DNA of 64,000 nt, taken from contig NW_002060963.1 in assembly GCF_000150275.1 (NCBI RefSeq), positions 653,262 to 717,261 of the forward strand. Direction: 5' to 3'. The translations under genes and the position numbers were made by a program. Positions 43,038 through 57,491 of the stretch are shown piece by piece; the stretch's first letter is position 1; the number at the start of each line of letters is the position of its first letter. This DNA comes from Trichoplax adhaerens (taxonomy: Eukaryota > Animalia > Placozoa). The notes under the pieces were generated by a model. It had not been told where the DNA came from. It was given only the letters and a program-made list of their open reading frames with translations, and made no database searches.

Positions 43038-44313
43038 ATACCTGGCAAGCTATGCCTGGCGGATTAATTAGTCATCGCAGCATGCACTTTAAAGCGTTGC
43101 ACCCTCTACATTATATGACTTAACATCGCAATTAGTAACAAAAGACAATTAAGTCAAAGAAATCAACGGACTGAATAAATAAATAATAGAGTAACTTTGC
43201 CATCAAATACAGTTCCATTTACTCCTCGCTGCACAGTAATAAGCCAAAAACAAACTATCAGAAGGTAGTTTTAGTCTATAGGGTCGTGATGACCTTTCCC
43301 ATAACAGTATACTTTACGCTCGATTAAGTAGCGGATTGAAAAGTGATGGATCTGATTTAAGGGAGTATGGCTAAACTCTATTTGACTACGGAAGGGAAAA
43401 TACTATGCTAAAGGAGGATAAAACAATGCGCAAGCATTTTAATGTAAATCTTTTCTGGCAATAATCCTTCAGTTATAGTAGGGCATCATGTTATTATTAT
43501 AAAGACAATAAATAATCAATATCATTGTTTGCACATATTGTCAATAATAGAAAAAAAATGGGAAAAGGTGAAGAAAAGTGCTATACTTAATAGTATTTGA
43601 GTTTGTAATAATATCATAGATTCCATCGTAATTAGACTTAATCGGCCCACTAACTGATCATTGTCAAATCATTTCAGAAGCGACATTTCTCCTTGAATGT
43701 AATTTTCAAATTTTACTCTAAAATCTCATTGGTAAAGCTCATTTTTTTCTTTACATATTTTAATTAATTCGATGTAGAGACATAAGTAACGTCCAATTGT
43801 TTGCTAGCATTGTTTATTCTCCAGGATTCTCTTATTCATTTTTCTTTTGCCTCGATAATCTTTAAGTTAGCGTGTATAAATGAGCGTACATTAAGACAAT
43901 CGCAAAGGCACTTGATATTTTGGGATTGGATGTAAAGAATTCCATGACTGCATGTCTGAAATTGCTAAGGTAAAAACTACCTGTTGAACATTAGGATTAA
44001 GAAAATGTTATAGCTTTGTCGTCGTAATTTACTTCTATTAAGATCACAGACCGTTCATATCATAACATTTAATGGAAGAGCTAGAATATTTTGTCATAAA
44101 TTACGTGGATTACAATCATTAAAATGACGCAACGATTATCGTATCATGCTAATGTGAATAATATCATCCAGTGTAGATATTAAGATGGCGAAATGAAGAT
44201 AAAACTAATTGTCTTTGCTCACCAAGCACTTGGTTTTTGAATTTAAAGCTCAAGCTTAGCGAGAATAATTTAATTCTTTTCTTCCTACAGAAATTAAACG
44301 CGAAAAAATTCTG

Positions 44314-47300
44314 ATGGACGGTCAAATGACGACGATTTCATTACCCGGAAAAGGGAAAGATGAAATAATTGAAGCAACCAAGGGTATCAGTAGTAAGGTA
44401 CGGATAGCTTAGGAAGCTTAATATGAGCTATAAGGGTAAAAGAAATTAACTAAAACTAATGACTAGAACGAGAATACTCTTTTTTGCCTGCAGAATGAAT
44501 CATAGTAGTCCTTTAATAATCCTACCGTTGAATTGCCTTCTGGCAAATTCTATAGAATTATTTAAACATAGCTAAGGCTGAATTGTAATGTAGGATAAGG
44601 TTTTCATTTTTTCCTCCAATATATTATGACAATTTCTATTAATAAATCCCTCAGGAATGAATTACTTTCAAAACCACTACGGACTATTTAAGAATTCTAC
44701 TTCACGTTCATTTCGATAGTACTACCAAGAAATATGTGATAGCCCTTTTAAAAGGACATATATTAGGGTAGCCATAGATCAGAAATATATGGTATCTAGA
44801 AATTAAAATTAGATCAATACGCGTATGATAATTTCTATTAATAAATCCCATTGGAAAAAATTATCTTCAAAACGATGATAGAGTATTAAGCCCAAATAGA
44901 AAATTATCTACCGCTATTTTGCTTTACCGAATTGTAAATATAGTTAGTAAAGAATATTGAGTTTACTTCATTCTAGAATTCCCAATAAATACAACAAATT
45001 GCATGTACAATTCAAAACCAGTGATTTATTGTCTCAATTAACGAATTATTTTTGCTCATAAAATATCTTTAAAACTTTTGTAATCATTAAACAGCGCTAA
45101 GCCGTACTTATATCAACGAAGTTATTTCACAGTGTTGCCGAGCTACGGTAAAACTTAATAAAATTTCTGTAAGGAAGTGATAGGCATATCCGTTCTCCCA
45201 CCATACACGTGATTTAACGCATTAGTAGGTAATTAAGGATGTGCCGTATTGTCCAATAATTTTCTTTCCAGAAGATTCTCATCAAACTTTACGATTACTG
45301 AACAAAGTTATGTTCTGGTAATGCCCTTCTAGTTGCTTTATTTAAACCCTACGCAATTTACTGTGAGTAAATTTGTTTAGTAGACAACTTGCTTCCAAAA
45401 GTGCCTTTTCGAAAACTTATCGACTATCGTACCTCACAAGGCTTGAATTTCACAAATCAGCAAGAATGAGATAAATTTGGATGAAAATATATTGTCATCT
45501 ACGGAATCTGTTCAAATTGAAGCATAGCAAAACTCTAACCTATGGGCTATTTCCTGTTTGGTCAAAATATAACGTTACAATATGATATTATGCATTTGAT
45601 TATCATTTTCATATGAAATAGGATTAAAAAAAATTTTTGAATTTCTTCCCCAGAACAGTAAACACGATTCGATATTTCTATACGTTATTATGAAATAATG
45701 ATAACTACGTGCATTAACCGAATCGTTTCTTCGTCTCTTATAGTTATGTCGGAATGAAAACAGTTCAGCTAATTATCCTTTTGTGGTAGTACTATTATAG
45801 CTACTTTTTAACGTAGTTTTTTTATCATCTCAATATACAAAGTTACCGTAGTCATGATAATATTTCAATGATAATATAATCATACATTAGGTCGATGGAT
45901 CAACGAGATCCTGAAAAGAATTACCGAATTACATATATCATCATAAACCGTGTAATACATAATTGTTACTTAGCTTTCTCTGATATGGAGATTACAATAT
46001 TTTAGCGACAAGCTGAACTATGTTCCAAATATTGTGAGATGAAGCCAATATCCTCAGACCATTTCGCATTCGTTCACAATGGATGTATCCTTTCACCTGA
46101 TGATCAATTAGCGACGGGGAAAGTAGCTTATCGTGCGGAATTTTTCTCATTCGATTTTGATGGACTACTCCGATTTGATCAACAAGCCTTTAACTATGTT
46201 TATCAACAAGTAAGTGATATATTTTAACGTATCGAATAACCGTTACTTGGAATATTATGAATCATAAAGCAATGGGTATCTAATCTGTATTTATTTTAAG
46301 GCTATTCACTTGCTATAACGTTTGGCTATTATAGTAATTTATTCATTCATTTCTTCATGATTGATATCTTAGTGTTTACAAGATATTGAAGATAAAAATA
46401 TCAAATTGCAGTGTAATCAAGCCGCTACTTTGTCTGTCTTAACTTGGTTATTAAAAAATTTAGAGAAAGGCCTTGTACTAAACGAAATTAAGGATTTCGA
46501 TATCAGGTGCGACCACAAATCACAACTACATCGTCTATATTTAAGAATTTTCACCTATAGGTTATAATGTGAATATCTAGTGCAGCGCCAAAATAGGTCA
46601 TTTTTTTAGGTTAAATTGGAAGATTGTACAGTACTATATTGTATAATCGTCATTCTAGAGACAGGTGCATATAGTGGTTGGCAGGTAAACTTATTCATGT
46701 AGTATTAATGCAGCTAACAAGAAATTATAATCCTCATCATAAACTTAAGACATTTCATCACAAAATGCCTGCCGCCTTTACGGAAAGTAAAAAGAAGTAC
46801 TCTAGACCTTTAACTATTCTTTTTCCATGTGCTAATCTCACTGAATAGTTAACATCATCTAGAGGGTATTCATAGTAGTTATTTTAAATCTTAATAATAT
46901 ATGACTTATTTTATCATTAATACTATAAGCACCGTCTAAAATATACTTATTAATTGTATATTTACGTTGTTTCATCGCAATAATCATACATAATCTCTTA
47001 ACCTGTAATTAAAAATTAGAAATAATTAATAGATAAAATCGATTGACTATGCGGCTAAATTCCCTTACCTTTTCGATCCCAGATGGAACGATCTAAAACT
47101 ATTTCGCTGTTGCAAGACTTGCTTATTCCGTCGAATACTTGCAGGACGAAAGAAATCACGTTGTCCAGTTCTAGGACAACTTGTAAAAGAAGGCATTGCA
47201 AAGATTGATCATGAAATTATCAATTATTATAACAGAAAAAAAAATCTCTATGCTAGTATGGATAAACAAGAAAAATCAATTAAATCTTCTTTAGTCTCTC

Positions 47301-50300
47301 CTGAAGAAATTATCTGCCAAGGAGATAATATATCAATACAGACTAGTGAAGATGTATCGACATCTAATTTATCCGTTACTCAAATAGTGCAACATAACAT
47401 ATTAGAATTTCTATTCACACTTAAAGAATTTCAATATAAAGTGTTTTCGGCATTCGAGGTAAGATATTTCTTTCACCTCCATAATACCCAAGATGTAGTA
47501 TAAGTATTATGCAATCTACAGCATAAAAAGCAGTCAGAGATTAGCTCTGGGTATCGGTCTGCCTTTCTTCTAAATGTTTAAAATATCATCTCAAATAGAA
47601 AATGGTATGAAAGCTTTATCAATTATTCTTAATTAAATTGCAGTTAAATTCGCCTTAATTATACAGTTAACCTCATCAGTAATTGATTAGCTAAGAGGTT
47701 AATGTCTTCAGTAAATTTTAGCTACAAAATTACATTAGACCCGTTTAAAAATTGAAAATCCTTTGTACTAGTAGCTGCTGATATATATGTTATTAAGTTG
47801 ATGGTTTAAAATTGACAGTTTCGAATTGTAGATAATTATTTTAAATAACAATTCGTTAACATCCACGATATCAGATCAAATTATAATCATAGACTAGAGA
47901 ATTATACTAAGCCTTTATAATATATATAAATTCTCACTAGGAGGGAAAGAAAGTGTACGAGATTGCAGTTTCATGTCAAGGCCTCGTAAGTGAACTTATT
48001 ATTACTATGAACACAGCCACTGTATAAGTAGCAGTAAGCACCCTAGCTATGCCAGTAGAAAGGATACAGAAATTACTACGATTTTCTCTAAATGGCTTTT
48101 AACTCTAAATAAAGTCAGGTTTTCGATTTTATTAATTCGGCGCAATAAGAAGTTCCTTCATAACATTGCAATTTAACTATCAGCCTTCATGTCCTTAGTA
48201 TCATTTTTACGTGTACTGTACGATCAGAATTATCCGAAGGATACTAACAGCATTGTCAGATAAAATAAACTTACCAAATTTTAAAATCTTAAATCTCCGA
48301 GTAATATCCTTAGCTAACGAAATTTATACCTTTTTCCATGATTTTTGCGTGAATGATAACGTACCGCACTTGTGAATAATTTGAATCTATAAATAATGTC
48401 ATCAGACAAACTGAACTTACCTATTTAATATTTCAATAGCGGAATTCTGTGCCAATTTGATAAGTTTCATGACTTGTTTATCATTTTTATTCGTGTAATA
48501 TTATCCGGATAGTTTGATGGATATTTGTGGTATTTTTAGATAAATCGAATCGATAAAATTTAATACCTTAGCAGCGGCTTCTATAGCTGCGGTGTAAATA
48601 TTATAATTAACTACTTTATTCAGAAGAGCTATTTATTTGAATTCTTATGCTTCCACAACCATTTTTCTACAGGTATTTAAAATGTCTACCAGCAATAATG
48701 AGGAAGAAAAATTATTTTCTATTGAAGATATAATTTCAATCCAAGTCCAGAATCATGTTATTCAAGTTGAAGTCAATCAAATAGATAATTGCAACATTAC
48801 CAGTTCAATGGACAAATATCTCGAGAAAGAGCTCGGTTATACTGCTTCATATACCTATAAATGGGTAAGTCAATCGTAATTGTAGTAACGTATTCCATTT
48901 AATTATTTTACAGAGAATAATTTTCCCAAATAAAACCAACCTACAATAGTTTGCACTTTCCAAAATATCAAGACGCTATCTTTTAGTAGATTCATTACAT
49001 TGCAATTTCTATATTAGATATTACGCAACAATAGCATGATAATTAATCACATCGTTAACGGCAGTAAAATAATCGCTCTGGATATTACCTCATCCTGTAG
49101 CGCTCTACTCTGAATCAGCTTGTATCTACGCAACTTAACTTTCGCTACCTTAAAATTATTTATGGATCTATGATATTTTTAAGGCCTTTCAATTATGTAC
49201 GTTAGATTGCTGTTATGTAGCATCAATAATGTGCCTTATATACACTTTAAAGTATATTTATATCAATTCATAAATAAAGCAGTATCTTGTTAGTTAGATT
49301 TTTAAGGGTATCCGGGAGTGAATCAGATTGTTTCTTAACAATTTCTCGTGGAAAAACAAACTACAGTACATGTTGTGGCATGTTATTTTATGCTAAAATA
49401 TGTACTAACGTAAGATTTTTCAGCGTTTAATAATATTTTGCTAATTCAATACTATTGTAATAAGTACGATTGCAAGTTTGATGCTTAGTGCTTTATAATA
49501 ATCGAGATTATAATAGTAAAATCCTTAATACTATTTTTATTTAACAGGCATGTCAGAACGAAATGAAAGCTAAATCTTTCTCAAACGTTCTTAAAGGCTA
49601 TTACAGATTGTTAGTAAATCGAAACACTAATTTATCAGGAGGTAAAGGGTTTAGAGACTGTAATCTGGAGTATTTTTTAATTATGCCAGATTCACGATAG
49701 AAATGTTTATTTTATTTAACAGATGTGAATTCTACATGTTCTGAATATAGATTTGTTGTAAACTATACCTGCTAGTTTATCAGTAATATATATACATCAG
49801 TAATAATGCCTGATGAGACCATTAATTTAGGAACATCTAAAATTACCGCCACAAAAGGCAGATTTTGATTAAATAACATTGTAAGCCAGATCATTATCTT
49901 TTGCAGGTAAACAAGAAATAGCAGTAGATTTAGAAAATGAGCTAAAAGGTGTTCTTCATGGGCCATTACGGTTAGTAGAGATTTAGATCGCAGTATATAA
50001 ACAGATTTTAGCGTAGGCTATTTTTTTAGCTATATTCACTTTCAGACGAGCAGGGTAAAAGATAAGCAGCAAGCAGATATACTCATGTAAAGTTCCTTGA
50101 ATAATATACAGACTTAATATGCTATAAAGTCAGAATATTTAGCTCTAAACTAATCATTAAGAGTCTCCCTCCATAATGTATATCAATCGAAAATATTCGT
50201 TTATAGGATTAATCTAGATGCTAAAATTCTACCATTTTGAATAGCTGTTCTAAGAAAGCATTATTAGACCGCGTTAATCAATATCACGCTATTTTTCTAT

Positions 50301-53300
50301 CAATGATAGATGTTCCATTGCATTGGCCACTATTATGTCTGTTCTACCAAATCACGGGTATTATCTAATTCAAAAGGATACAGAATCTTTTGAATTTGTT
50401 AATATCATAAATTATCATCAAGAAAAAAACCAGTACCAGAGTTTTAGAATTATGTTAAAGAATATACGAGATGAGAACGACTCAAATTCAAACGAAATTT
50501 CACTTCAAGACATCAAAGACTACATAGAAGCAAAATTAAATAAGGTACGTAGCTAAAGGCGTAAATATTAGTTATGTAACTGTATAATAAGTAAACTATT
50601 GGCAGTTTGCTCAAATGGCCACCTAATTATAGCCTAATGTTGAATTCTATTGCAAATCTGCTATAATAAAAGACTTTATTCAGATCTTTCGTTCGCAAAA
50701 TGTGAATTGTTAACCAATGCTTTACTATTTAGAGAGGCTACCTAGGATTTAAAAAGCCAATTGTGGTGAAATCTACAGGTAGATAAATTTCACAAATTCG
50801 TAGTTTTCTTTGATCTGATGGAATATATTTGAAATATGAACGTTATGACAAGGAGATATACGAGTTAGTCAGGTGCTGGTTAACGTATTTAAATAATGAA
50901 TATTTGCAAATTTACCTTTATGATAACTATATGATTTGGATATTTTATAAATTAAGCGAGAACTTTTAGGCCTTAATCATTTAAGTTAGGTTTATCTATA
51001 TGATGTACATACAGGTGCATGTTACAGGTACTTACAGGTGGATGTTAAGTGATGAAAATTAGATATAAATTTCCATCAGAAGTGATCTATAACAAGTTTT
51101 TTAAAGTAGCTCAGTGACTAATCCTGATATTCAAATTAAAGAATTAAGCTATGTAACTAATGATATGAAATTGAATCCTTTCCAAGCTGAGTGCAAGACT
51201 TGTATTTCCTATTAGTAACGAATTTTAGTAATGCATTAGTGAAAGAATTAGTATACGAAAAGATATAACTAAATATTAACTAAAAGGCGATATCAGATCA
51301 AAATCAGTACTGGCATAAATATATTCGATATAGCTGCTTCAAAACCTACTGTAGATCAATCTTAAGGAATGACAACTTATTACTTGAACATAATTTTGCT
51401 AAAATTTGCAAAGTTTCATTTCATATTAACATACCAGTTAATTTTATACATAGTTTAATGTTGTATGGACATAAATACTTTCAGGAAAATTACCTCGATT
51501 AGCCACTGTTCATTCGAGAGATGTTACCTTCAGTTATCCATGGACCATAAAAGGCCTATCCGCACACTATAAGCTCGTCAATCCAGTTCATAAGGATTCA
51601 AATACTGTAATAAAATATAATATTTATAATAATTACATTGAAACTTTATCCGATATTTAAAATTAATTAATATCATGATATGCTATGTATTCAATAATGT
51701 GTTAGTATTTGAGATCTTATATGAACAATTAATTATTTTAAAAGTCTATCGCTCATTCCTATTATGGTATGTGGACCTCATCTGGACTTTATCATATGGC
51801 TCCAAATACACCCATTTTAGTTAAAAAAATTAAACACTACCGTTGGCTCAATATCAAAGAGGTAGGATACACATAGTTGTACCTAAGTAATTCTTAATTT
51901 ATTGACTTAAATATAAGGCTGTTTTAAGATCAGTTTTGAAATCTTTACAATCAATATAGACGTTATACGGGTTTAAGTAAATCTTGTGGCTAAGACAGTT
52001 TCAATATCTATAAGCAGAGGGAAAAATGGAATCAGTTAATTACTAAACACTACTATAATTCTTTTTCAGGGTGTATTCACATTAAGTCATCCAAATATAC
52101 TTACAATGCTTGCACTTGGCGAAGTTTGTGATGATCAAATAACTCTAATATATGAACAACCTTCATTAGGATCACTGGCTGTCTTTCTAAAAGAACACAC
52201 GTAAGAATTACGAATTAGTTGGCTAATATTAAGTTAACTCGTAGACGGGTTAATTCTAGTAGATTGCTATCGTATTTACATTGTAGAAATTATATTTCAA
52301 AATAGTGCCGGATTTTTAGTTCGCAGTCGTTAACTATCGCACAAATTTAAAATCTTTATCATGAAATAGAAATATCCATACAACACGACTCATTGACTAT
52401 AGTTACCAGATCGCCCTAGCAATGGAATACATTGAATCTAAGGTTTATTACTTGCACCTCGCTATGAAATGTAGGCTACGAGTTTTTCAATTTTGGTAAT
52501 TTATGATAATTTGGAATTGCTTTGAATATTCAACCAGGGATATGTCCACGGTTGCCTTTGTGCACATAATATTTATATGAAGACAGCTGATCATATTGTT
52601 TTAAGTGAAATTGGCCTCCAATATGCGACTCAGAAGGCCAATAAAAAGAGTTCAAACGAGTATATCAACTATATTGATCCCAGAACAGAATATCATTATG
52701 ATTATCAATATAAAAGCGAATTGTAAGAGACTTTGCGTTATTAAAATGATAAGTTACGGAAGTCTTGTGTTATAAGATTTGCGACAGCCAAACTGATACT
52801 TTTTTGTACACGCATGCATGCTACGTCTTAGCAACACTCATTATATCGTGTCTTCCATATTATAATAAATAGTATAGATTGGTGGTCTCCAGAACTACTT
52901 ACTAGTAGTGATGTGCTCTTTAATCATAAAACTGATGTTTGGAGTTTTGGTATTACAATTTGGCAAGTATTTAATAATGGAAATAGGCCATTCAACAATT
53001 TAAATCATGGCATGGTAAGTATGATATTACAAAATATTGCTAACTTGTTCCTATATTCTCATCATTACTTTTGTTTACCATTATTTCTATATTTAATGTT
53101 AGAAAATTTCTATGATCAAAGAAGGCATTTGGTTGGATAATACCAAGTATGTATAGACGAGTTATTATTACTACGTAGTAAAATTATTATTTATGCTATT
53201 ATGGGAAAATTAAACGAAAATTGACGGAGTGAATATTAATAAACTTACACCTATAAAGCTTATCGCAATTTATACTGTAATATGGAACAATTCATTCTTT

Positions 53301-56300
53301 CACATATCTATGATATATAGATTTCCATCACTTGACATTACCTATTTAATGTTCAAGCAATGCTGCCATTATGATGCAAATGTAAGATGTACTTACACGC
53401 TTAGCATTGAATATCTATTAGAAATATTGTGACCATGTCAAAGGATATTATCTACGTTATTTTTATATCTTAACCATTGACTTTCCATAGAGACGACCGA
53501 AGTTCCGAAAAATCGTCGAAGAACTGAAACAGATAAAAAAAAATCAAGGCAAGGAGTTTAAACAAATAACAATAACAAGCTTTCCAAATAGTGAAGAAAG
53601 CATGGTCATCGATAGTAAAAGACTCGATGATATGTTTACTGAGACAAATTCTAATAAAAGTGATCAGGTAAATGGTAATTTGGTGCTAGAATTTAGAATT
53701 AAAAATTCGGTGCTGCCCTCTTTTTAAAGCTACTTCTTAAATTAGGGTAATTATGGCAGAGTTATGCCTTATGATCTCTCAGCAAGTAAACAAGTGGTAA
53801 ATATTAATATATCATGTCTTCTCATCATCGTCTAATATTATATTTTAAGCCGTAAATCTCATTTATACCAACTGTATGTTTTCACTTTATCAACTCTAAA
53901 TTGCCAACTATGTACTCTTAAAATCGATAGAACTAGCGACTCAGATCGAGACGTGATATCAGTGCTAACCTTGCATTGATGTACGATATTGTTTTTGAAT
54001 TATATGCCGTACTTCATAGCAAACGCAAATACTGCACTAGCTGTTCATTAGAAGGATTACATAAAGAATGAGATATTATACTTTCCTTTTCCATTTCTTC
54101 ATAACATAAAATTAAAATAACCAGCGAGTGCATTACACTAAATCCACGTATAAATGTTATCTAGTATCAATTCTAAAAGATTAGTAATGAGTATTACTTT
54201 CTCCTGTTCTAAATACATTTAAGCTTTAAGTACAGCGCTTTGAAACGTACCATAGTTAAATGTAAATTAATAAGTTCATATCTAGCTTTTCACAACGAAA
54301 TGAAATTAGATCATAAATCCTTAAATTTTAACGGAATGAGTAGATTCTTCACGAATATTTGCACATAAAATACATATCAGAGTTCTAGTGAATTCCCTTG
54401 GCATCTGTACTTCTTTAATATACTGTAGATTGAATATTGCCCCTGATCAAATAATTAGTTATTTATAATCATGCTATGTAACATTAAGGTATTCATTTCA
54501 TGTAACTATTAATTTACATTGCATGTTGTACTGTTGAAGTAAGCTATATTTCAATATTCTAAAATGTCATAGGCAATTAAATGCCATTTGAATAGAAGCG
54601 ATAAAGGTGGCTTATGTTTATATTCGGAGTACCGTATACTGAAAGATTTAGACTGCCAATTTATTATAAAACCTCTTGGATATGGAGTATTAGGTCAGAG
54701 TAACAGATTTAGATCATTCTATATTTATGTACTCTTGAAATTAAAATGATGACTAATGTTGGCCAATGATTTCTAATCGATATAGGTAAACGAAGTTATA
54801 TGGTCTTGCCCTATTACCCCGCAAAAGATTTGTTTAAGTATCTTCAGAATCGAAATGCCAAAGTTGGCGATTCTTCGTCGGTTAGTGCTTGTATTAGTGT
54901 TAATATCGAGTGTAAATATCATCGGACCACACATAGAGGAGCATGATAAATCAGTTTGCACTTGTTTAATATCATCATATTTATTTATTGGTATCTCATC
55001 ATTAAAGTATATTTATTATTTTCCGATAAAAAGTGTAATGTAGGACAACTGTATAAGTTTGCGAAGCAGATTGCAGATGCCCTGGATTATTTGGTAAGTA
55101 GAAGAGCTAGACACTAAGTACTTTTATGTTAGAACTTGATACAATACAGTATGTGCCTAAATTAACTACTGTATTCGCTGCTTCTAAATCAATTGATATC
55201 CTGCTAATCAATTTATTACGAACAATTATAAGTTTGAATCTGATACAAATTAAAACATTCTCTAAGTAAGGACTATGTATTTAATCTTAAAATATAATAA
55301 CTATGCATCTTTAAATCATTGAACAATTTCTTTATTTTTTTAGTTTAATTATAATGATATGTAAAAAATGACGCTTTACATTCACTCATGTAAAAATATT
55401 TTATCCTTAATGATGGTAATGACATTTTAATAGCATAATAAATGGATAGTCCATCGCGATATTAGAACTCCTAATATTTTAGTGGATGGTGCTGGGCATG
55501 GAGTTAAGTTAGCAGATTTTGGAATAGCTGAGTACGTTACTCCAATGCTCAATAATGGATGTCACCATAAATGTGTGAACCAATTGGCTGGTTTACAGTT
55601 GCCGAAATCCAGGTAATATAGAAGTTGAAGTAGTTTAAATATATCTATAAAATTGAATACTCATGTTTCCTGTAGACTGCTTAATAATGTAAGATAAATT
55701 AATATATATGACTTTTTGCTATGGCATATGGGTATTCTAGTACTTATCTTAATTAAAATTTTTAAGGTACTTAGATGATACTAATTAAAATTGATCAATT
55801 ACTTATTTTGACCATTGTAAACGTCTTGTCTGAAATGTACGTGAGAAGTTACCCTCCTGAAGCCGTCACTAAGCGAAATAGGTAAAACAATTGTTGTTCT
55901 GGTTACTATAAGATTATAGCTTTCTAAATGCTAATGAATACCATCAAGTATACTTTGCAGTTAATTCTACACTTGATATTACATCAGTAAGAGTTAAAAT
56001 TGCATATTTTAGTAGTATCTAACGCTTATTCATCTAAGAGTGTAATGCTAATCAACAAAACTAGCATATACGCTTATCTATTCTTAAGTCAAACATCTAA
56101 TTCGCAGTCAAAATCACATTAATGGACTATTGAGTAACTCTATTAAATTAAATATACGCGTATTTCTGACTGCTTTAAGCGCTTTTTCCAATGGTAAATA
56201 ATTTTATAATTCTAACTTCACAACAATTACTACTAACACTGCAGTATATAAAAATCATTCTATTCAGTGATGCAGTGCCAAGACATTTTTGGTATATTAT

Positions 56301-57491
56301 ACTATTGTAGTGCAGCCTCAAATATAGCTTAGATTACTATTATAAGACTGTACGAGAATAACTTAACTTGTAAGCTAGAGTGTAAGATTGTATAAGAGTC
56401 TATTTGTAGAAGATGTTTACAGTACGTATTGTAGCGAATCTATTAAGATGTTTATATAAAGATCTGAGATATACAGTAAATAGATTTGCGCTAAGTATGT
56501 TAGTACTGTAAGTATTGTATTGTAATGCTTTAAAATAGATGCGCGAATTATGAATAGATTGCGCGATAGTAAATTTAGATCTGATCTTGCGACTTAATGG
56601 GCAAGATAAGATTTGTTACAGTAAAAGCATTCTGTAACTAATCGTATATAAATCGTGAATTTTGCTGTAATAAGTAGATTGTCAGATAGTCAGATAGTCC
56701 TTGGTAGTTAGACGAACCTAACTTCTGCAATAAAGTGAAATTTGCAAGAAACTGTAATTCTTGATTTATTGTTTTGAAGATCACTTTATCACAACTATAT
56801 ACGTATATTTGCTTCTAGGCCTTATTAATCGATTCATGTTTAGAATATTAATTCAGTACTTATGTGAAATTGCAATTAATACTCGTAGCAGCTAAATTTT
56901 AGATAAATTGCAATGATATTGTGCCTTTTGGTATTCCACAACAAAGGCTTCTGCATCGTCGCTTTGAACTATGTATATCATCAAATGATTTAATTATGGT
57001 TCGATAATTTCAGATACGCAGAAACTTGGTATGGATTTCCAGCTGAAGTATGGAGTTTCGGGATCGTTATGTGGGAGATTTTTACGTATGCCGAAATAGC
57101 AGCCTCGCGGCTAGCGGTAGGTATTCCAATAAATTCATATATAAAATAGTCTACTTTATATATCTAATAATGAATCGATAAAAATAGTGTTCTATTCTAT
57201 CCGTTGATTTTTTCTTATTTCAGAATAATGCATTTTTTAAAATGTCCGTTTCGTGTGAAATCTTCATAGTAACATTACTGTTATGCTATTGATCTTTTTG
57301 AACCCTTTTAGAATAAGGCTGAAGGAATTTCTGCCGACTTACTTTTAAGCAGAGGACCGAGTAATAATCCTGAGTTCCAGCTGGCTATCAATTTAATACG
57401 CGGTTGTTTAAAGGAAAATCCAGACACTCGAATTAATATCCGTCAAATACTATCAAAATTAGATCAGAGATGCAACACAATAATTTATTAG
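44314..57491 (+). CDS. Divergent Janus kinase (JAK)-like protein: FERM + SH2-like + pseudokinase + kinase
   Basis: Frame-consistent GT-AG exons. FERM: 46006-46209 (HFAFVHNG...VAYRAEFF...AFNYVYQQ), ~46373-46506, ~47083-47458, 47941-47985, 48673-48864, 49548-49641 (AKSFSNVLKGYYRLLV), 49907-49970 (VLHGPL). SH2-like: 50310-50544 (GYYLIQKDTESF). Pseudokinase ~51745-53520 (ILVKK, LSHPNIL, YQIALAMEYIE, VHGCLCAHNI, LSEIG, WWSPE, TDVWSFGITIWQVF, RRPKF). Kinase 53746-57491 (GNYGRV, VAIK, KQIADALDYL, VHRDIRTPNILV, VKLADFG, YPPE, EVWSFGIVMWEIFTY). The start at 44314 and the exons before 46006 are uncertain. Confidence 0.85.

What the first reader, a model, noticed from the sequence alone, without database searches (positions are those of the whole stretch)
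46006..57491. Hidden full-architecture Janus kinase (FERM-SH2-pseudokinase-kinase) in a probable placozoan
Seen: about 20 short exons join in one continuous frame and give, in order, a FERM domain ending in SFSNVLKGYYRL...HGPL (JAK2 from recall: SFVSLIDGYYRL...HGPI), a degenerate SH2, a kinase-fold domain lacking the catalytic Asp, and a second kinase domain with VAIK/HRD/DFG. Established: this four-domain order defines the JAK family. My recollection, which needs verifying, is that the original Trichoplax genome analysis called JAK/STAT incomplete for lack of a Janus kinase, and that pseudokinase-bearing JAKs are often treated as mainly bilaterian. Small exons and high divergence would explain a miss or split by gene predictors. 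If confirmed, a complete JAK-STAT module may exist in this lineage.
Basis: partly seen in the sequence, partly recalled or inferred. Interest (0 to 1): 0.92.

Follow-up and report, generated by a model that had tools for sequence, protein, structure and literature searches.

The report
Known Trichoplax JAK-like kinase gene
The stretch is a real, expressed 27-exon gene of the placozoan Trichoplax adhaerens. It encodes a very divergent Janus-kinase-like protein (FERM-like head, pseudokinase, kinase) that is already in public databases and is named JAK2 in the sister strain, so it is a correction to some reviews, not a new gene.

Summary
It has 27 GT-AG exons and encodes 1125 aa.

Spliced RNA contigs from four studies carry every junction from the end of the FERM-like region through the pseudokinase into the HRD/DFG exon. 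So it is one transcript.

The gene is not hidden:
- The window encodes XP_002117218.1 (TRIADDRAFT_61274, T. adhaerens, 1069 aa) letter for letter.
- The 99%-identical RDD42551.1 of Trichoplax sp. H2 (1125 aa) is already named "Tyrosine-protein kinase JAK2".

Shown here:
- Two tandem kinase folds. The first has HGC for HRD and EIG for DFG. The second has VAIK, HRD and DFG.
- The best two-domain PDB matches are JAK1 and TYK2.
- The 16 nearest named clusters by language-model features are all JAK or Hopscotch clusters.
- A separate FAK gene, STAT genes and a SOCS gene lie elsewhere in the genome.

Not shown:
- The FERM is only weakly detectable.
- The SH2 is not detectable by Pfam, by PDB sequence search or by a fragment fold search.
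- The catalytic domain is atypical: HRDIRTPN loop, no tandem YY.
- I could obtain no JAK sequences, so no tree was built.

I put JAK homology at about 0.68.

The parts
44193..44232 (+). exon 1, start codon, aa 1-13 (start of the F1-like lobe)
   Evidence: exact mapping of P0001. Not checked with RNA here.
44291..44397 (+). exon 2, aa 14-49
   Evidence: exact mapping of P0001, GT-AG
46006..46209 (+). exon 3, aa 50-117 (F1-like to start of F2-like).
   Evidence: The weak Pfam FERM_M hit at aa 107-145 begins here.
46373..46506 (+). exon 4, aa 118-162 (F2-like)
   Evidence: FERM_M 13.7 bits
47083..47458 (+). exon 5, aa 162-287 (F2-like, with a long helical insert)
   Evidence: 97% tblastn hit
47941..47985 (+). 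exon 6, aa 288-302
48673..48864 (+). exon 7, aa 303-366 (F3-like)
   Evidence: The RNA loose end before 49547 matches 48834-48863.
49548..49641 (+). exon 8, aa 367-398, holds SFSNVLKGYYRL (terminal helix of a FAK/JAK-type F3 lobe)
   Evidence: RNA joints. Local alignment to the end of the FAK FERM, P about 0.03-0.05.
49907..49970 (+). exon 9, aa 398-419, holds HGPL
   Evidence: RNA joints 49639>49905 and 49969>50309 in four runs
50310..50544 (+). exon 10, aa 419-497, the putative SH2-like module (fold not verified)
   Evidence: RNA. 100% to P0001. No SH2 hit.
50733..50778 (+). exon 11, aa 498-513. Absent from the H1 RefSeq model, present in the H2 model.
   Evidence: RNA contigs, frame check, P0015
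51485..51606 (+). exon 12, aa 513-553, linker and start of the pseudokinase. Absent from the H1 RefSeq model.
   Evidence: RNA joints 50775>51482 and 51606>51745
51745..51861 (+). exon 13, aa 554-592, pseudokinase N-lobe (beta3 Lys kept)
52070..52200 (+). exon 14, aa 593-636, pseudokinase
52370..52442 (+). exon 15, aa 636-660, pseudokinase helix before the catalytic loop
52538..52722 (+). exon 16, aa 661-722, pseudokinase catalytic loop VHGCLCAHN (no Asp), EIG for DFG, long Tyr-rich loop
52873..53014 (+). exon 17, aa 722-769, pseudokinase C-lobe (WWSPE, DVWSFG)
   Evidence: PK_Tyr_Ser-Thr 44.3 bits
53103..53146 (+). exon 18, aa 770-784
53321..53381 (+). exon 19, aa 784-804
53491..53667 (+). 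exon 20, aa 805-863, end of the pseudokinase and linker between the two kinase folds
53746..53796 (+). exon 21, aa 864-880, Gly-rich loop of the catalytic domain
54573..54693 (+). exon 22, aa 881-921, VAIK Lys and helix C Glu
54786..54880 (+). exon 23, aa 921-952
55034..55093 (+). exon 24, aa 953-972
55434..55612 (+). exon 25, aa 973-1032, HRDIRTPN catalytic loop, DFG, activation loop with a single Tyr
   Evidence: RNA joint 55092>55433
57014..57116 (+). exon 26, aa 1032-1066, degenerate APE region and VWSFG
   Evidence: P0001 mapping. The H2 model is the same. Not checked with RNA here.
57312..57491 (+). exon 27, aa 1067-1125, plus the stop codon at 57489-57491
   Evidence: Not checked with RNA here.

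Best explanation
This is the single-copy Trichoplax adhaerens gene TRIADDRAFT_61274. Its orthologue in Trichoplax sp. H2 is RDD42551.1, named 'JAK2'. It is a very divergent member of, or sister to, the Janus kinase family.

Shown: one 27-exon mRNA encodes an N-terminal region of about 395 aa with weak FERM signals, a module of about 100 aa of unverified fold, a tyrosine-kinase-like pseudokinase without the catalytic Asp, and a C-terminal kinase with all catalytic residues.

Inferred from how JAKs work:
- The N-terminal half tethers the protein to the membrane-proximal tail of a receptor.
- The pseudokinase restrains the catalytic domain.
- Receptor clustering lets two molecules activate each other.
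- The kinase then phosphorylates the receptor and the STAT proteins found elsewhere in this genome, with SOCS as feedback.

The atypical catalytic loop (HRDIRTPN), the degenerate P+1/APE segment and the lack of tandem activation-loop tyrosines suggest that regulation, and perhaps substrate choice, differ from bilaterian JAKs.
For: - One transcript: the GT..AG joints from 49639>49905 to 55092>55433 are seen in runs from four studies, and in X5 all listed ones carry one contig's depth figure, 440.9. The upstream exon 7 junction comes from a loose end.
- Exact 25-exon mapping of XP_002117218.1 onto the window. The 27-exon frame is open for 1125 aa.
- Pfam finds two kinase domains: PK_Tyr_Ser-Thr 251 bits, Pkinase 173 bits.
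- The pseudokinase has HGC/EIG; the kinase has VAIK/HRD/DFG.
- PDB phmmer: full-length JAK1 (7t6f) scores E 5.5e-27 with one collinear stretch, aa 617-1063 against JAK1 663-1082. TYK2 JH2-JH1 (4oli) scores 8.6e-25. These are the best natural hits.
- The same output shows JAK1 JH2 with VHGNVCTKN and LSDPG, against VHGCLCAHN and LSEIG here.
- Whole-protein ESM-Atlas features: the first 16 named clusters are all JAK1, JAK2 or Hopscotch at 0.97-0.99, sharing 226-242 of 256 features. FAK appears only from rank 17, at 0.95.
- For the N-terminal 520 aa alone, all listed nearest families are FERM-type or related (0.78-0.85, a lead only).
- Weak Pfam FERM_M hit at aa 107-145.
- The best local match of the N-terminal half to a FAK is the terminal helix of the FERM F3 lobe, at the matching position.
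- It is not the FAK orthologue. A separate gene with FERM_C_FAK1 and Focal_AT hits lies at G000:C1408:3.968-3.972 Mb.
- No paralogue of the N-terminal half exists in the genome.
- Pathway partners are present. Two STAT_alpha+SH2 loci and one SH2+SOCS_box open frame were found.
- The public name JAK2 comes from an RNA-evidence-based MAKER annotation. The paper reports Swiss-Prot hits for 81.4% of models; that the name derives from such a hit is my inference (PMC6057997).
Against: - No JAK-specific Pfam model (FERM_F1, FERM_F2, Jak1_Phl, SH2_1) and no generic SH2 model hits the protein, even at E 10.
- The collinear JAK1 alignment across GYYRL...HGP is not significant on its own (2.3 bits).
- A pLDDT-70 model of the putative SH2 exon matches no SH2 structure. 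Foldseek's best E is 0.72, and the best VIA Z is 4.7 with no SH2 among the 50 rows listed.
- Taken alone, the pseudokinase scores higher against EGFR, FAK, Fes and Eph than it appears to against JAK1 JH2, for which no separate score was obtained.
- The HRD-DFG exon of the catalytic domain finds mostly Ser/Thr kinases (GCN2, PKA, CDK7/11, RIPK1). Its top row is the EGFR tandem construct at only 13.1 bits per domain.
- There are no tandem activation-loop tyrosines.
- No phylogeny with JAK sequences could be made.
- The full-length AlphaFold model failed (pLDDT 28.5).
Confidence: 0.68

Rival explanations
1. Convergent architecture. A FAK-type FERM head became joined to a duplicated tyrosine-kinase domain independently of bilaterian JAKs, as proposed for Monosiga UTK05mod. 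On this reading the protein works like a JAK but is not an orthologue.
For: - Each kinase domain alone is no closer to JAK than to other tyrosine kinases.
- JAK-specific Pfam FERM and SH2 models are silent.
- The GYYRL-type helix is shared with FAK.
- The literature records an independent FERM-SH2-dual-kinase protein in a choanoflagellate and a sponge JAK-like protein without a pseudokinase (PMC3670263).
Against: - The pseudokinase shares with JAK JH2 the Gly after the catalytic-loop His, the Cys in the LAARN position and the Ser before the degenerate DFG.
- Domain sizes and spacing give a single collinear alignment to JAK1 across both kinase folds.
- Atlas neighbours are JAKs ahead of FAKs.
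Confidence: 0.22
2. The N-terminal 520 aa are not a FERM-SH2 unit at all. The gene would then be a pseudokinase-kinase protein with a lineage-specific head, and the JAK resemblance is limited to the tandem kinase folds.
For: - No significant profile or structure hit for aa 1-520.
- The Atlas scores for this part are below 0.9, a level that shuffled proteins often reach.
Against: - All listed Atlas neighbours of this part are FERM-type or related families.
- FERM_M hits at the expected place.
- The FAK F3-helix match lies at the matching distance from the N-terminus.
- Whole-protein neighbours carry SH2_1 and Jak1_Phl.
Confidence: 0.07
3. Two adjacent genes (a FERM gene and a dual-kinase gene) wrongly merged by gene prediction.
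For: Exons 1-6 were not covered by the one read-laying run available here.
Against: - RNA contigs join exon 7/8 (F3-like) through every exon to exon 25 (HRD/DFG) in four studies.
- Two independent annotations agree.
- The frame is open throughout.
Confidence: 0.02

Closest known systems
Janus kinases (human JAK1/JAK2/JAK3/TYK2, Drosophila Hopscotch)
   Same: - Length: 1125 aa here, against about 1130-1190 aa.
- Domain order: FERM-like head, middle module, pseudokinase, kinase.
- The pseudokinase lacks the catalytic Asp, with a VHG..C..N catalytic loop and an LS[DE].G motif as in JAK1 JH2.
- There is a GYYRL...HGP[IL] motif at the FERM/SH2 boundary.
- The nearest Atlas clusters are JAKs.
   Different: - JAK-type FERM and SH2 Pfam models do not hit.
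- In the alignment to JAK1 the residue matching the SH2 phosphotyrosine Arg is Gln (YLIQKD), by my reading.
- The catalytic loop is HRDIRTPN, not HRDLAARN.
- The P+1/APE segment is degenerate (Trp replaced, Pro missing).
- The activation loop has one Tyr instead of tandem YY.
- There is a long Tyr-rich insert in the pseudokinase activation loop.
Ephydatia fluviatilis JAK-like kinase BAA81718.3 (as described in PMC3670263)
   Same: A non-bilaterian protein with FERM, SH2 and a JAK-related kinase.
   Different: The sponge protein is reported to lack the pseudokinase, and the Trichoplax protein has one. I did not compare the sequences because the sponge sequence could not be obtained.
Monosiga brevicollis UTK05mod (as described in PMC3670263)
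   Same: FERM, SH2 and two kinase domains in one protein outside Bilateria.
   Different: Its kinase domain is reported to group with SYK, and its architecture may be coincidental. Not compared here.
Focal adhesion kinase (FAK)
   Same: A FERM head followed by a tyrosine-kinase domain. The best local match of the N-terminal half is to the terminal helix of the FAK F3 lobe. The pseudokinase's best hit in my local protein set is a FAK (65.8 bits).
   Different: This gene has no FAT domain, has two kinase folds and has an extra module after the FERM. Trichoplax has a separate FAK gene at G000:C1408:3.968-3.972 Mb.

Membership tests
Janus kinase (JAK) family | N-terminal FERM domain of the JAK type (Pfam FERM_F1, FERM_F2, Jak1_Phl) | tested here: inconclusive
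   - No JAK-specific model hits P0015, even at E 10.
- Jak1_Phl finds nothing in the genome.
- Only FERM_M hits, at 13.7 bits, E 0.082, aa 107-145.
- Atlas neighbours of aa 1-520 are all FERM-type or related families at 0.78-0.85.
- The FAK F3-helix match has P about 0.03-0.05.
Janus kinase (JAK) family | SH2-like domain between the FERM and the pseudokinase (Pfam SH2_1) | tested here: inconclusive
   - No SH2 or SH2_1 hit on the protein or its exons.
- The fragment model (pLDDT 70) finds no SH2 fold.
- The only hint is that the 36%-identical metagenome fragment P0002 gives SH2_1 at 13.3 bits, E 0.11.
Janus kinase (JAK) family | Pseudokinase (JH2): a kinase fold without the catalytic Asp, N-terminal to the active kinase | tested here: met
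   PK_Tyr_Ser-Thr covers aa 595-816. HGC replaces HRD and EIG replaces DFG. Gly and Cys in the catalytic loop are shared with JAK1 JH2.
Janus kinase (JAK) family | C-terminal catalytic tyrosine-kinase domain (JH1) with HRDLAARN-type loop and tandem activation-loop tyrosines | tested here: not met
   - Catalytic Lys, Glu, HRD Asp, Asn and DFG Asp are all present.
- But the loop is HRDIRTPN, APE is degenerate and there is a single Tyr.
- The HRD-DFG exon finds mostly Ser/Thr kinases.
- The whole domain is nearest to InsR-like, ALK and LTK tyrosine kinases in my local set.
Janus kinase (JAK) family | All four modules in this order on one polypeptide | tested here: met
   RNA contigs, exact mapping of P0001 and the open 1125-aa frame.
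Janus kinase (JAK) family | Both kinase domains group with JAK JH1 and JH2 in phylogeny | not tested
   No JAK sequence could be obtained; the word-index searches missed them. As a proxy, JAK1 and TYK2 are the best two-domain PDB hits, but each single domain is no closer to JAK than to other tyrosine kinases.
Janus kinase (JAK) family | Binds Box1/Box2 of cytokine receptors and phosphorylates STATs | not testable with these tools
   STAT and SOCS genes are present. No IL6Ra-bind or EpoR_lig-bind hit was found, but the exon-wise search is a weak test. CRLF3 is reported in this genome (PMC12026705).
Focal adhesion kinase (FAK) family | C-terminal FAT domain and a single kinase domain | tested here: not met
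   No Focal_AT in this gene. The only Focal_AT hit is on another contig, next to a FERM_C_FAK1 hit.

The most novel reading that the evidence does not exclude
A true four-domain Janus kinase, pseudokinase included, already existed in the common ancestor of placozoans and bilaterians. In Trichoplax it works with the STAT genes and SOCS through a receptor that is not a classical cytokine receptor. The JAK-STAT-SOCS core would then predate both Bilateria and cytokine receptors, contrary to reviews that call the canonical JAK bilaterian-only or call Trichoplax JAK-less.
Probability: 0.45. Interest if true: 0.6.

Novelty: already known. Interest (0 to 1): 0.33.

Why it matters
Reviews still state that Trichoplax lacks a Janus kinase (PMC4612594) and that a JAK with a pseudokinase is unique to Bilateria (PMC3670263). 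A 2026 survey of JAK-STAT evolution says placozoans remain to be included (PMC13203501). An earlier report of this scan also calls Trichoplax 'an animal without JAK kinase'.

The gene has been in GenBank since 2008 and has carried the name JAK2 in strain H2 since 2018. What this work adds:
- RNA proof that the FERM-like head and both kinase folds are one transcript.
- A corrected 27-exon model for the reference strain.
- A plain list of which JAK hallmarks are present and which are not.

If orthology is confirmed, the pseudokinase-kinase tandem is older than Bilateria, and Trichoplax becomes a simple system for asking what a JAK does without classical cytokine receptors.

Tried and rejected
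- Pfam on single exons: only kinase exons hit; FERM and SH2 exons were silent.
- PDB sequence searches with single exons and with a two-row profile of the SH2-like exon: nothing meaningful. The TYK2 rows are a chance match to JH2, not to the FERM.
- AlphaFold of the whole H2 protein with a three-row alignment: pLDDT 28.5. I judged it unusable and ran no fold search on it.
- AlphaFold of exon 10 plus P0002: pLDDT 70.3, but there was no SH2 match by Foldseek (best E 0.72) or by VIA-align wide (best Z 4.7). This neither shows nor excludes an SH2.
- Three word-index protein searches (whole protein, kinase half, SH2-exon profile): none returned a JAK, so no tree, no JAK FERM-SH2 profile and no deeper alignment could be built.
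- I spent the one exhaustive representative search on an exon, before a full-length reference was in hand.
- Metagenome scan: one unrelated kinase locus, L008.
- Genome searches for STAT_bind, Jak1_Phl, IL6Ra-bind and EpoR_lig-bind found nothing. The true FAK FERM_C scores only 19.7 bits by this exon-wise method, so these blanks weigh little.
- The multi-kinase proteins P0018, P0021 and P0023 have no FERM and are not JAK-like.
- The window's own joined 27-exon translation was not sent to any search tool. Joined-protein searches used the public proteins P0001 and P0015 returned by tools. The joined model was used only inside scripts for mapping and local comparisons.
Full report
**What is there.** The region is AT-rich (about 30% G+C) eukaryotic DNA with many short open segments on the + strand. 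Translated exon by exon, Pfam recognises pieces of two separate kinase domains. The first lies at 52040-53137 and the second at 54950-57146. The upstream pieces give nothing.

An exhaustive search with the exon at 50278-50553 found a 1069-aa public protein, P0001, at 100% identity. P0001 is XP_002117218.1 / EDV20268.1, 'hypothetical protein TRIADDRAFT_61274 [Trichoplax adhaerens]', UniProt B3SAI7. Its 90% cluster also holds P0015 = RDD42551.1, 'Tyrosine-protein kinase JAK2 [Trichoplax sp. H2]', 1125 aa.

P0001 maps onto the window without a single mismatch, as 25 GT-AG exons from 44193 to 57488. The window is G000:C1394:653262-717261 of a 105.6-Mb, 1414-contig assembly.

**One transcript.** I laid contigs of four runs from four studies on 49500-55499. 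One run is on record as RNA; the other three are guessed RNA, and their spliced contigs bear that out. The contigs show GT..AG joints at every intron from 49639>49905 to 55092>55433. In run X5 every listed joint carries the depth figure of one contig (440.9).

The loose end before 49547 is the end of exon 7 (48834-48863, one mismatch). So the junction into the F3-like exon is also covered.

The RNA contains two in-frame exons, 50733-50778 and 51485-51606, that the 2008 H1 model skips and the H2 model includes. With them the window gives 27 exons and an open 1125-aa frame.

The H2 annotation was built by MAKER from RNA-seq evidence. The paper reports Swiss-Prot hits for 81.4% of its models, so I take the name JAK2 to be an automatic best hit (PMC6057997). 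Exons 1-6 and 26-27 were not checked with RNA here, because only one read-laying run was available.

**Domains.** Pfam on the whole protein gives only the two kinase domains.

An alignment with six tyrosine kinases shows the following:
- First domain: the beta3 Lys and a tyrosine-kinase-type WWSPE segment are kept. HGC replaces HRD and EIG replaces DFG. The region before the catalytic core is shortened, and there is a long Tyr-rich activation-loop insert.
- Second domain: the Gly-rich loop, VAIK, the helix C Glu, HRD, Asn and DFG are all present. The catalytic loop is HRDIRTPN. The segment where tyrosine kinases have P-x-x-W-x-A-P-E is degenerate. The activation loop has a single Tyr.

The HRD-DFG exon alone finds mostly Ser/Thr kinases in the PDB. 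Its top row is the EGFR tandem construct, at only 13.1 bits per domain. The whole second domain is nearest to InsR-like, ALK and LTK tyrosine kinases among the proteins I held. The first domain is nearest to FAK, Fes and Eph.

**How JAK-like is it?**

For:
- Apart from an artificial EGFR tandem construct, the best PDB hits of the whole protein are full-length JAK1 (E 5.5e-27) and TYK2 JH2-JH1 (8.6e-25). One collinear stretch runs from the first kinase fold's C-lobe through the linker into the second.
- The same output shows that JAK1 JH2 has VHGNVCTKN and LSDPG where this protein has VHGCLCAHN and LSEIG. The shared derived features are Gly after the His, Cys in the LAARN position and Ser before the dead DFG.
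- Whole-protein language-model features place it next to 16 JAK1, JAK2 or Hopscotch clusters at 0.97-0.99, ahead of FAK at 0.95.
- The N-terminal 520 aa alone are nearest to FERM-type and related families, but only at 0.78-0.85.
- FERM_M hits weakly at aa 107-145.
- The best local match between the N-terminal half and a lobster FAK is the terminal helix of the F3 lobe, at the matching position (hhalign P 0.033; 49 of 1000 shuffles reach the score).
- A separate FAK gene exists elsewhere.
- There is no paralogue of the N-terminal half in the genome.

Against:
- No JAK-specific FERM or SH2 model hits, and no generic SH2 model does.
- The JAK1 alignment over GYYRL...HGP scores 2.3 bits.
- The only usable structure model is the putative SH2 exon with its one distant relative P0002 (pLDDT 70.3). 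It matches no SH2 structure.
- The full-length model failed.
- No JAK sequence could be fetched, so I made no tree.

**Pathway context.** The genome holds at least two STAT_alpha+SH2 loci and one open frame with SH2 followed by a SOCS box. Another report of this scan counts seven STAT genes. Exon-wise searches for classical cytokine-receptor families found nothing, but this is a weak test. CRLF3 is reported in this genome (PMC12026705).

**Literature.**
A 2015 review says Janus kinase is absent in placozoans, citing the genome paper (PMC4612594).
- Liongue & Ward 2013 say the canonical JAK with a pseudokinase is unique within Bilateria. They describe the sponge protein as lacking a pseudokinase and Monosiga UTK05mod as perhaps coincidental (PMC3670263).
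- A 2024 review says Cnidaria and Placozoa lack only one functional unit of the pathway, citing a 2016 paper that I could not read (PMC11193209).
- A 2026 survey traces JAK to Porifera and says placozoans still have to be added (PMC13203501).
- No paper in the library names the accession numbers.

**Verdict.** The feature is real and expressed, and JAK is its closest known family. It is not hidden. It has been a single gene model since 2008 and has carried the name JAK2 in the sister strain since 2018.

What remains open is whether it is a true JAK orthologue (my estimate is about 0.68) or a convergent FERM-plus-dual-kinase protein (about 0.22). The atypical catalytic domain and the undetectable SH2 keep that question open.

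The window's own joined translation was used only in scripts. All searches of a joined protein used the public proteins returned by the tools.

Noticed in passing
window 50733-50778 and 51485-51606: The RefSeq model XP_002117218.1 of the reference strain skips two RNA-supported in-frame exons (56 aa, the linker and start of the pseudokinase) that the H2 model RDD42551.1 includes.
   Followed up: yes
window 54822 and 54850 (exon 23); also 52403, 52936, 53351: The RNA contigs differ from the reference at these places. At 54822 and 54850 this is seen in all four runs, partly in X4 and X6. The H2 protein differs from the H1 protein in exon 23. The public RNA runs may therefore carry H2-type alleles, or both alleles.
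   Followed up: partly
L005 (ENA ERZ27263980 contig k141_851507, gene at 510-803), protein P0002: A 97-aa open frame on a 1.2-kb metagenome contig is 36-39% identical to the SH2-like exon 10 and gives a sub-threshold hit to the JAK-type SH2_1 model (13.3 bits). It may be an exon of a JAK-like gene in another, unidentified organism.
   Followed up: partly
G000:C1408:1913761-1995624: A cluster of at least five SH2-plus-tyrosine-kinase genes, seemingly without introns (open frames of 287-407 aa), lies within about 80 kb. Their kinase domains are the closest genomic relatives of the pseudokinase (26-30% identity).
   Followed up: no
G000:C1413:7551867-7552325 (+): An SH2 (40.9 bits) followed by a SOCS box (35.8 bits) in one 194-aa open frame: a canonical SOCS gene.
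   Followed up: partly
L006 (G000:C1414:9843524-9846748) and L007 (G000:C1413:8994012-8997227): Two closely similar STAT-like loci. Each has a STAT_alpha hit with an SH2 hit 2-3 kb downstream on the same strand.
   Followed up: partly
G000:C1408:3968304-3972424 (+): The likely FAK orthologue: a weak FERM_C_FAK1 hit and a clear Focal_AT hit 4 kb apart. The true FERM_C reaches only 19.7 bits in the exon-wise genome search. This shows how insensitive that search is for split genes.
   Followed up: no
window 49966-50338, 53780-54148, 54200-54442, 55086-55434: Low-depth unspliced contigs lie over introns in the same runs. They are pre-mRNA or DNA carry-over and do not affect the spliced model.
   Followed up: no
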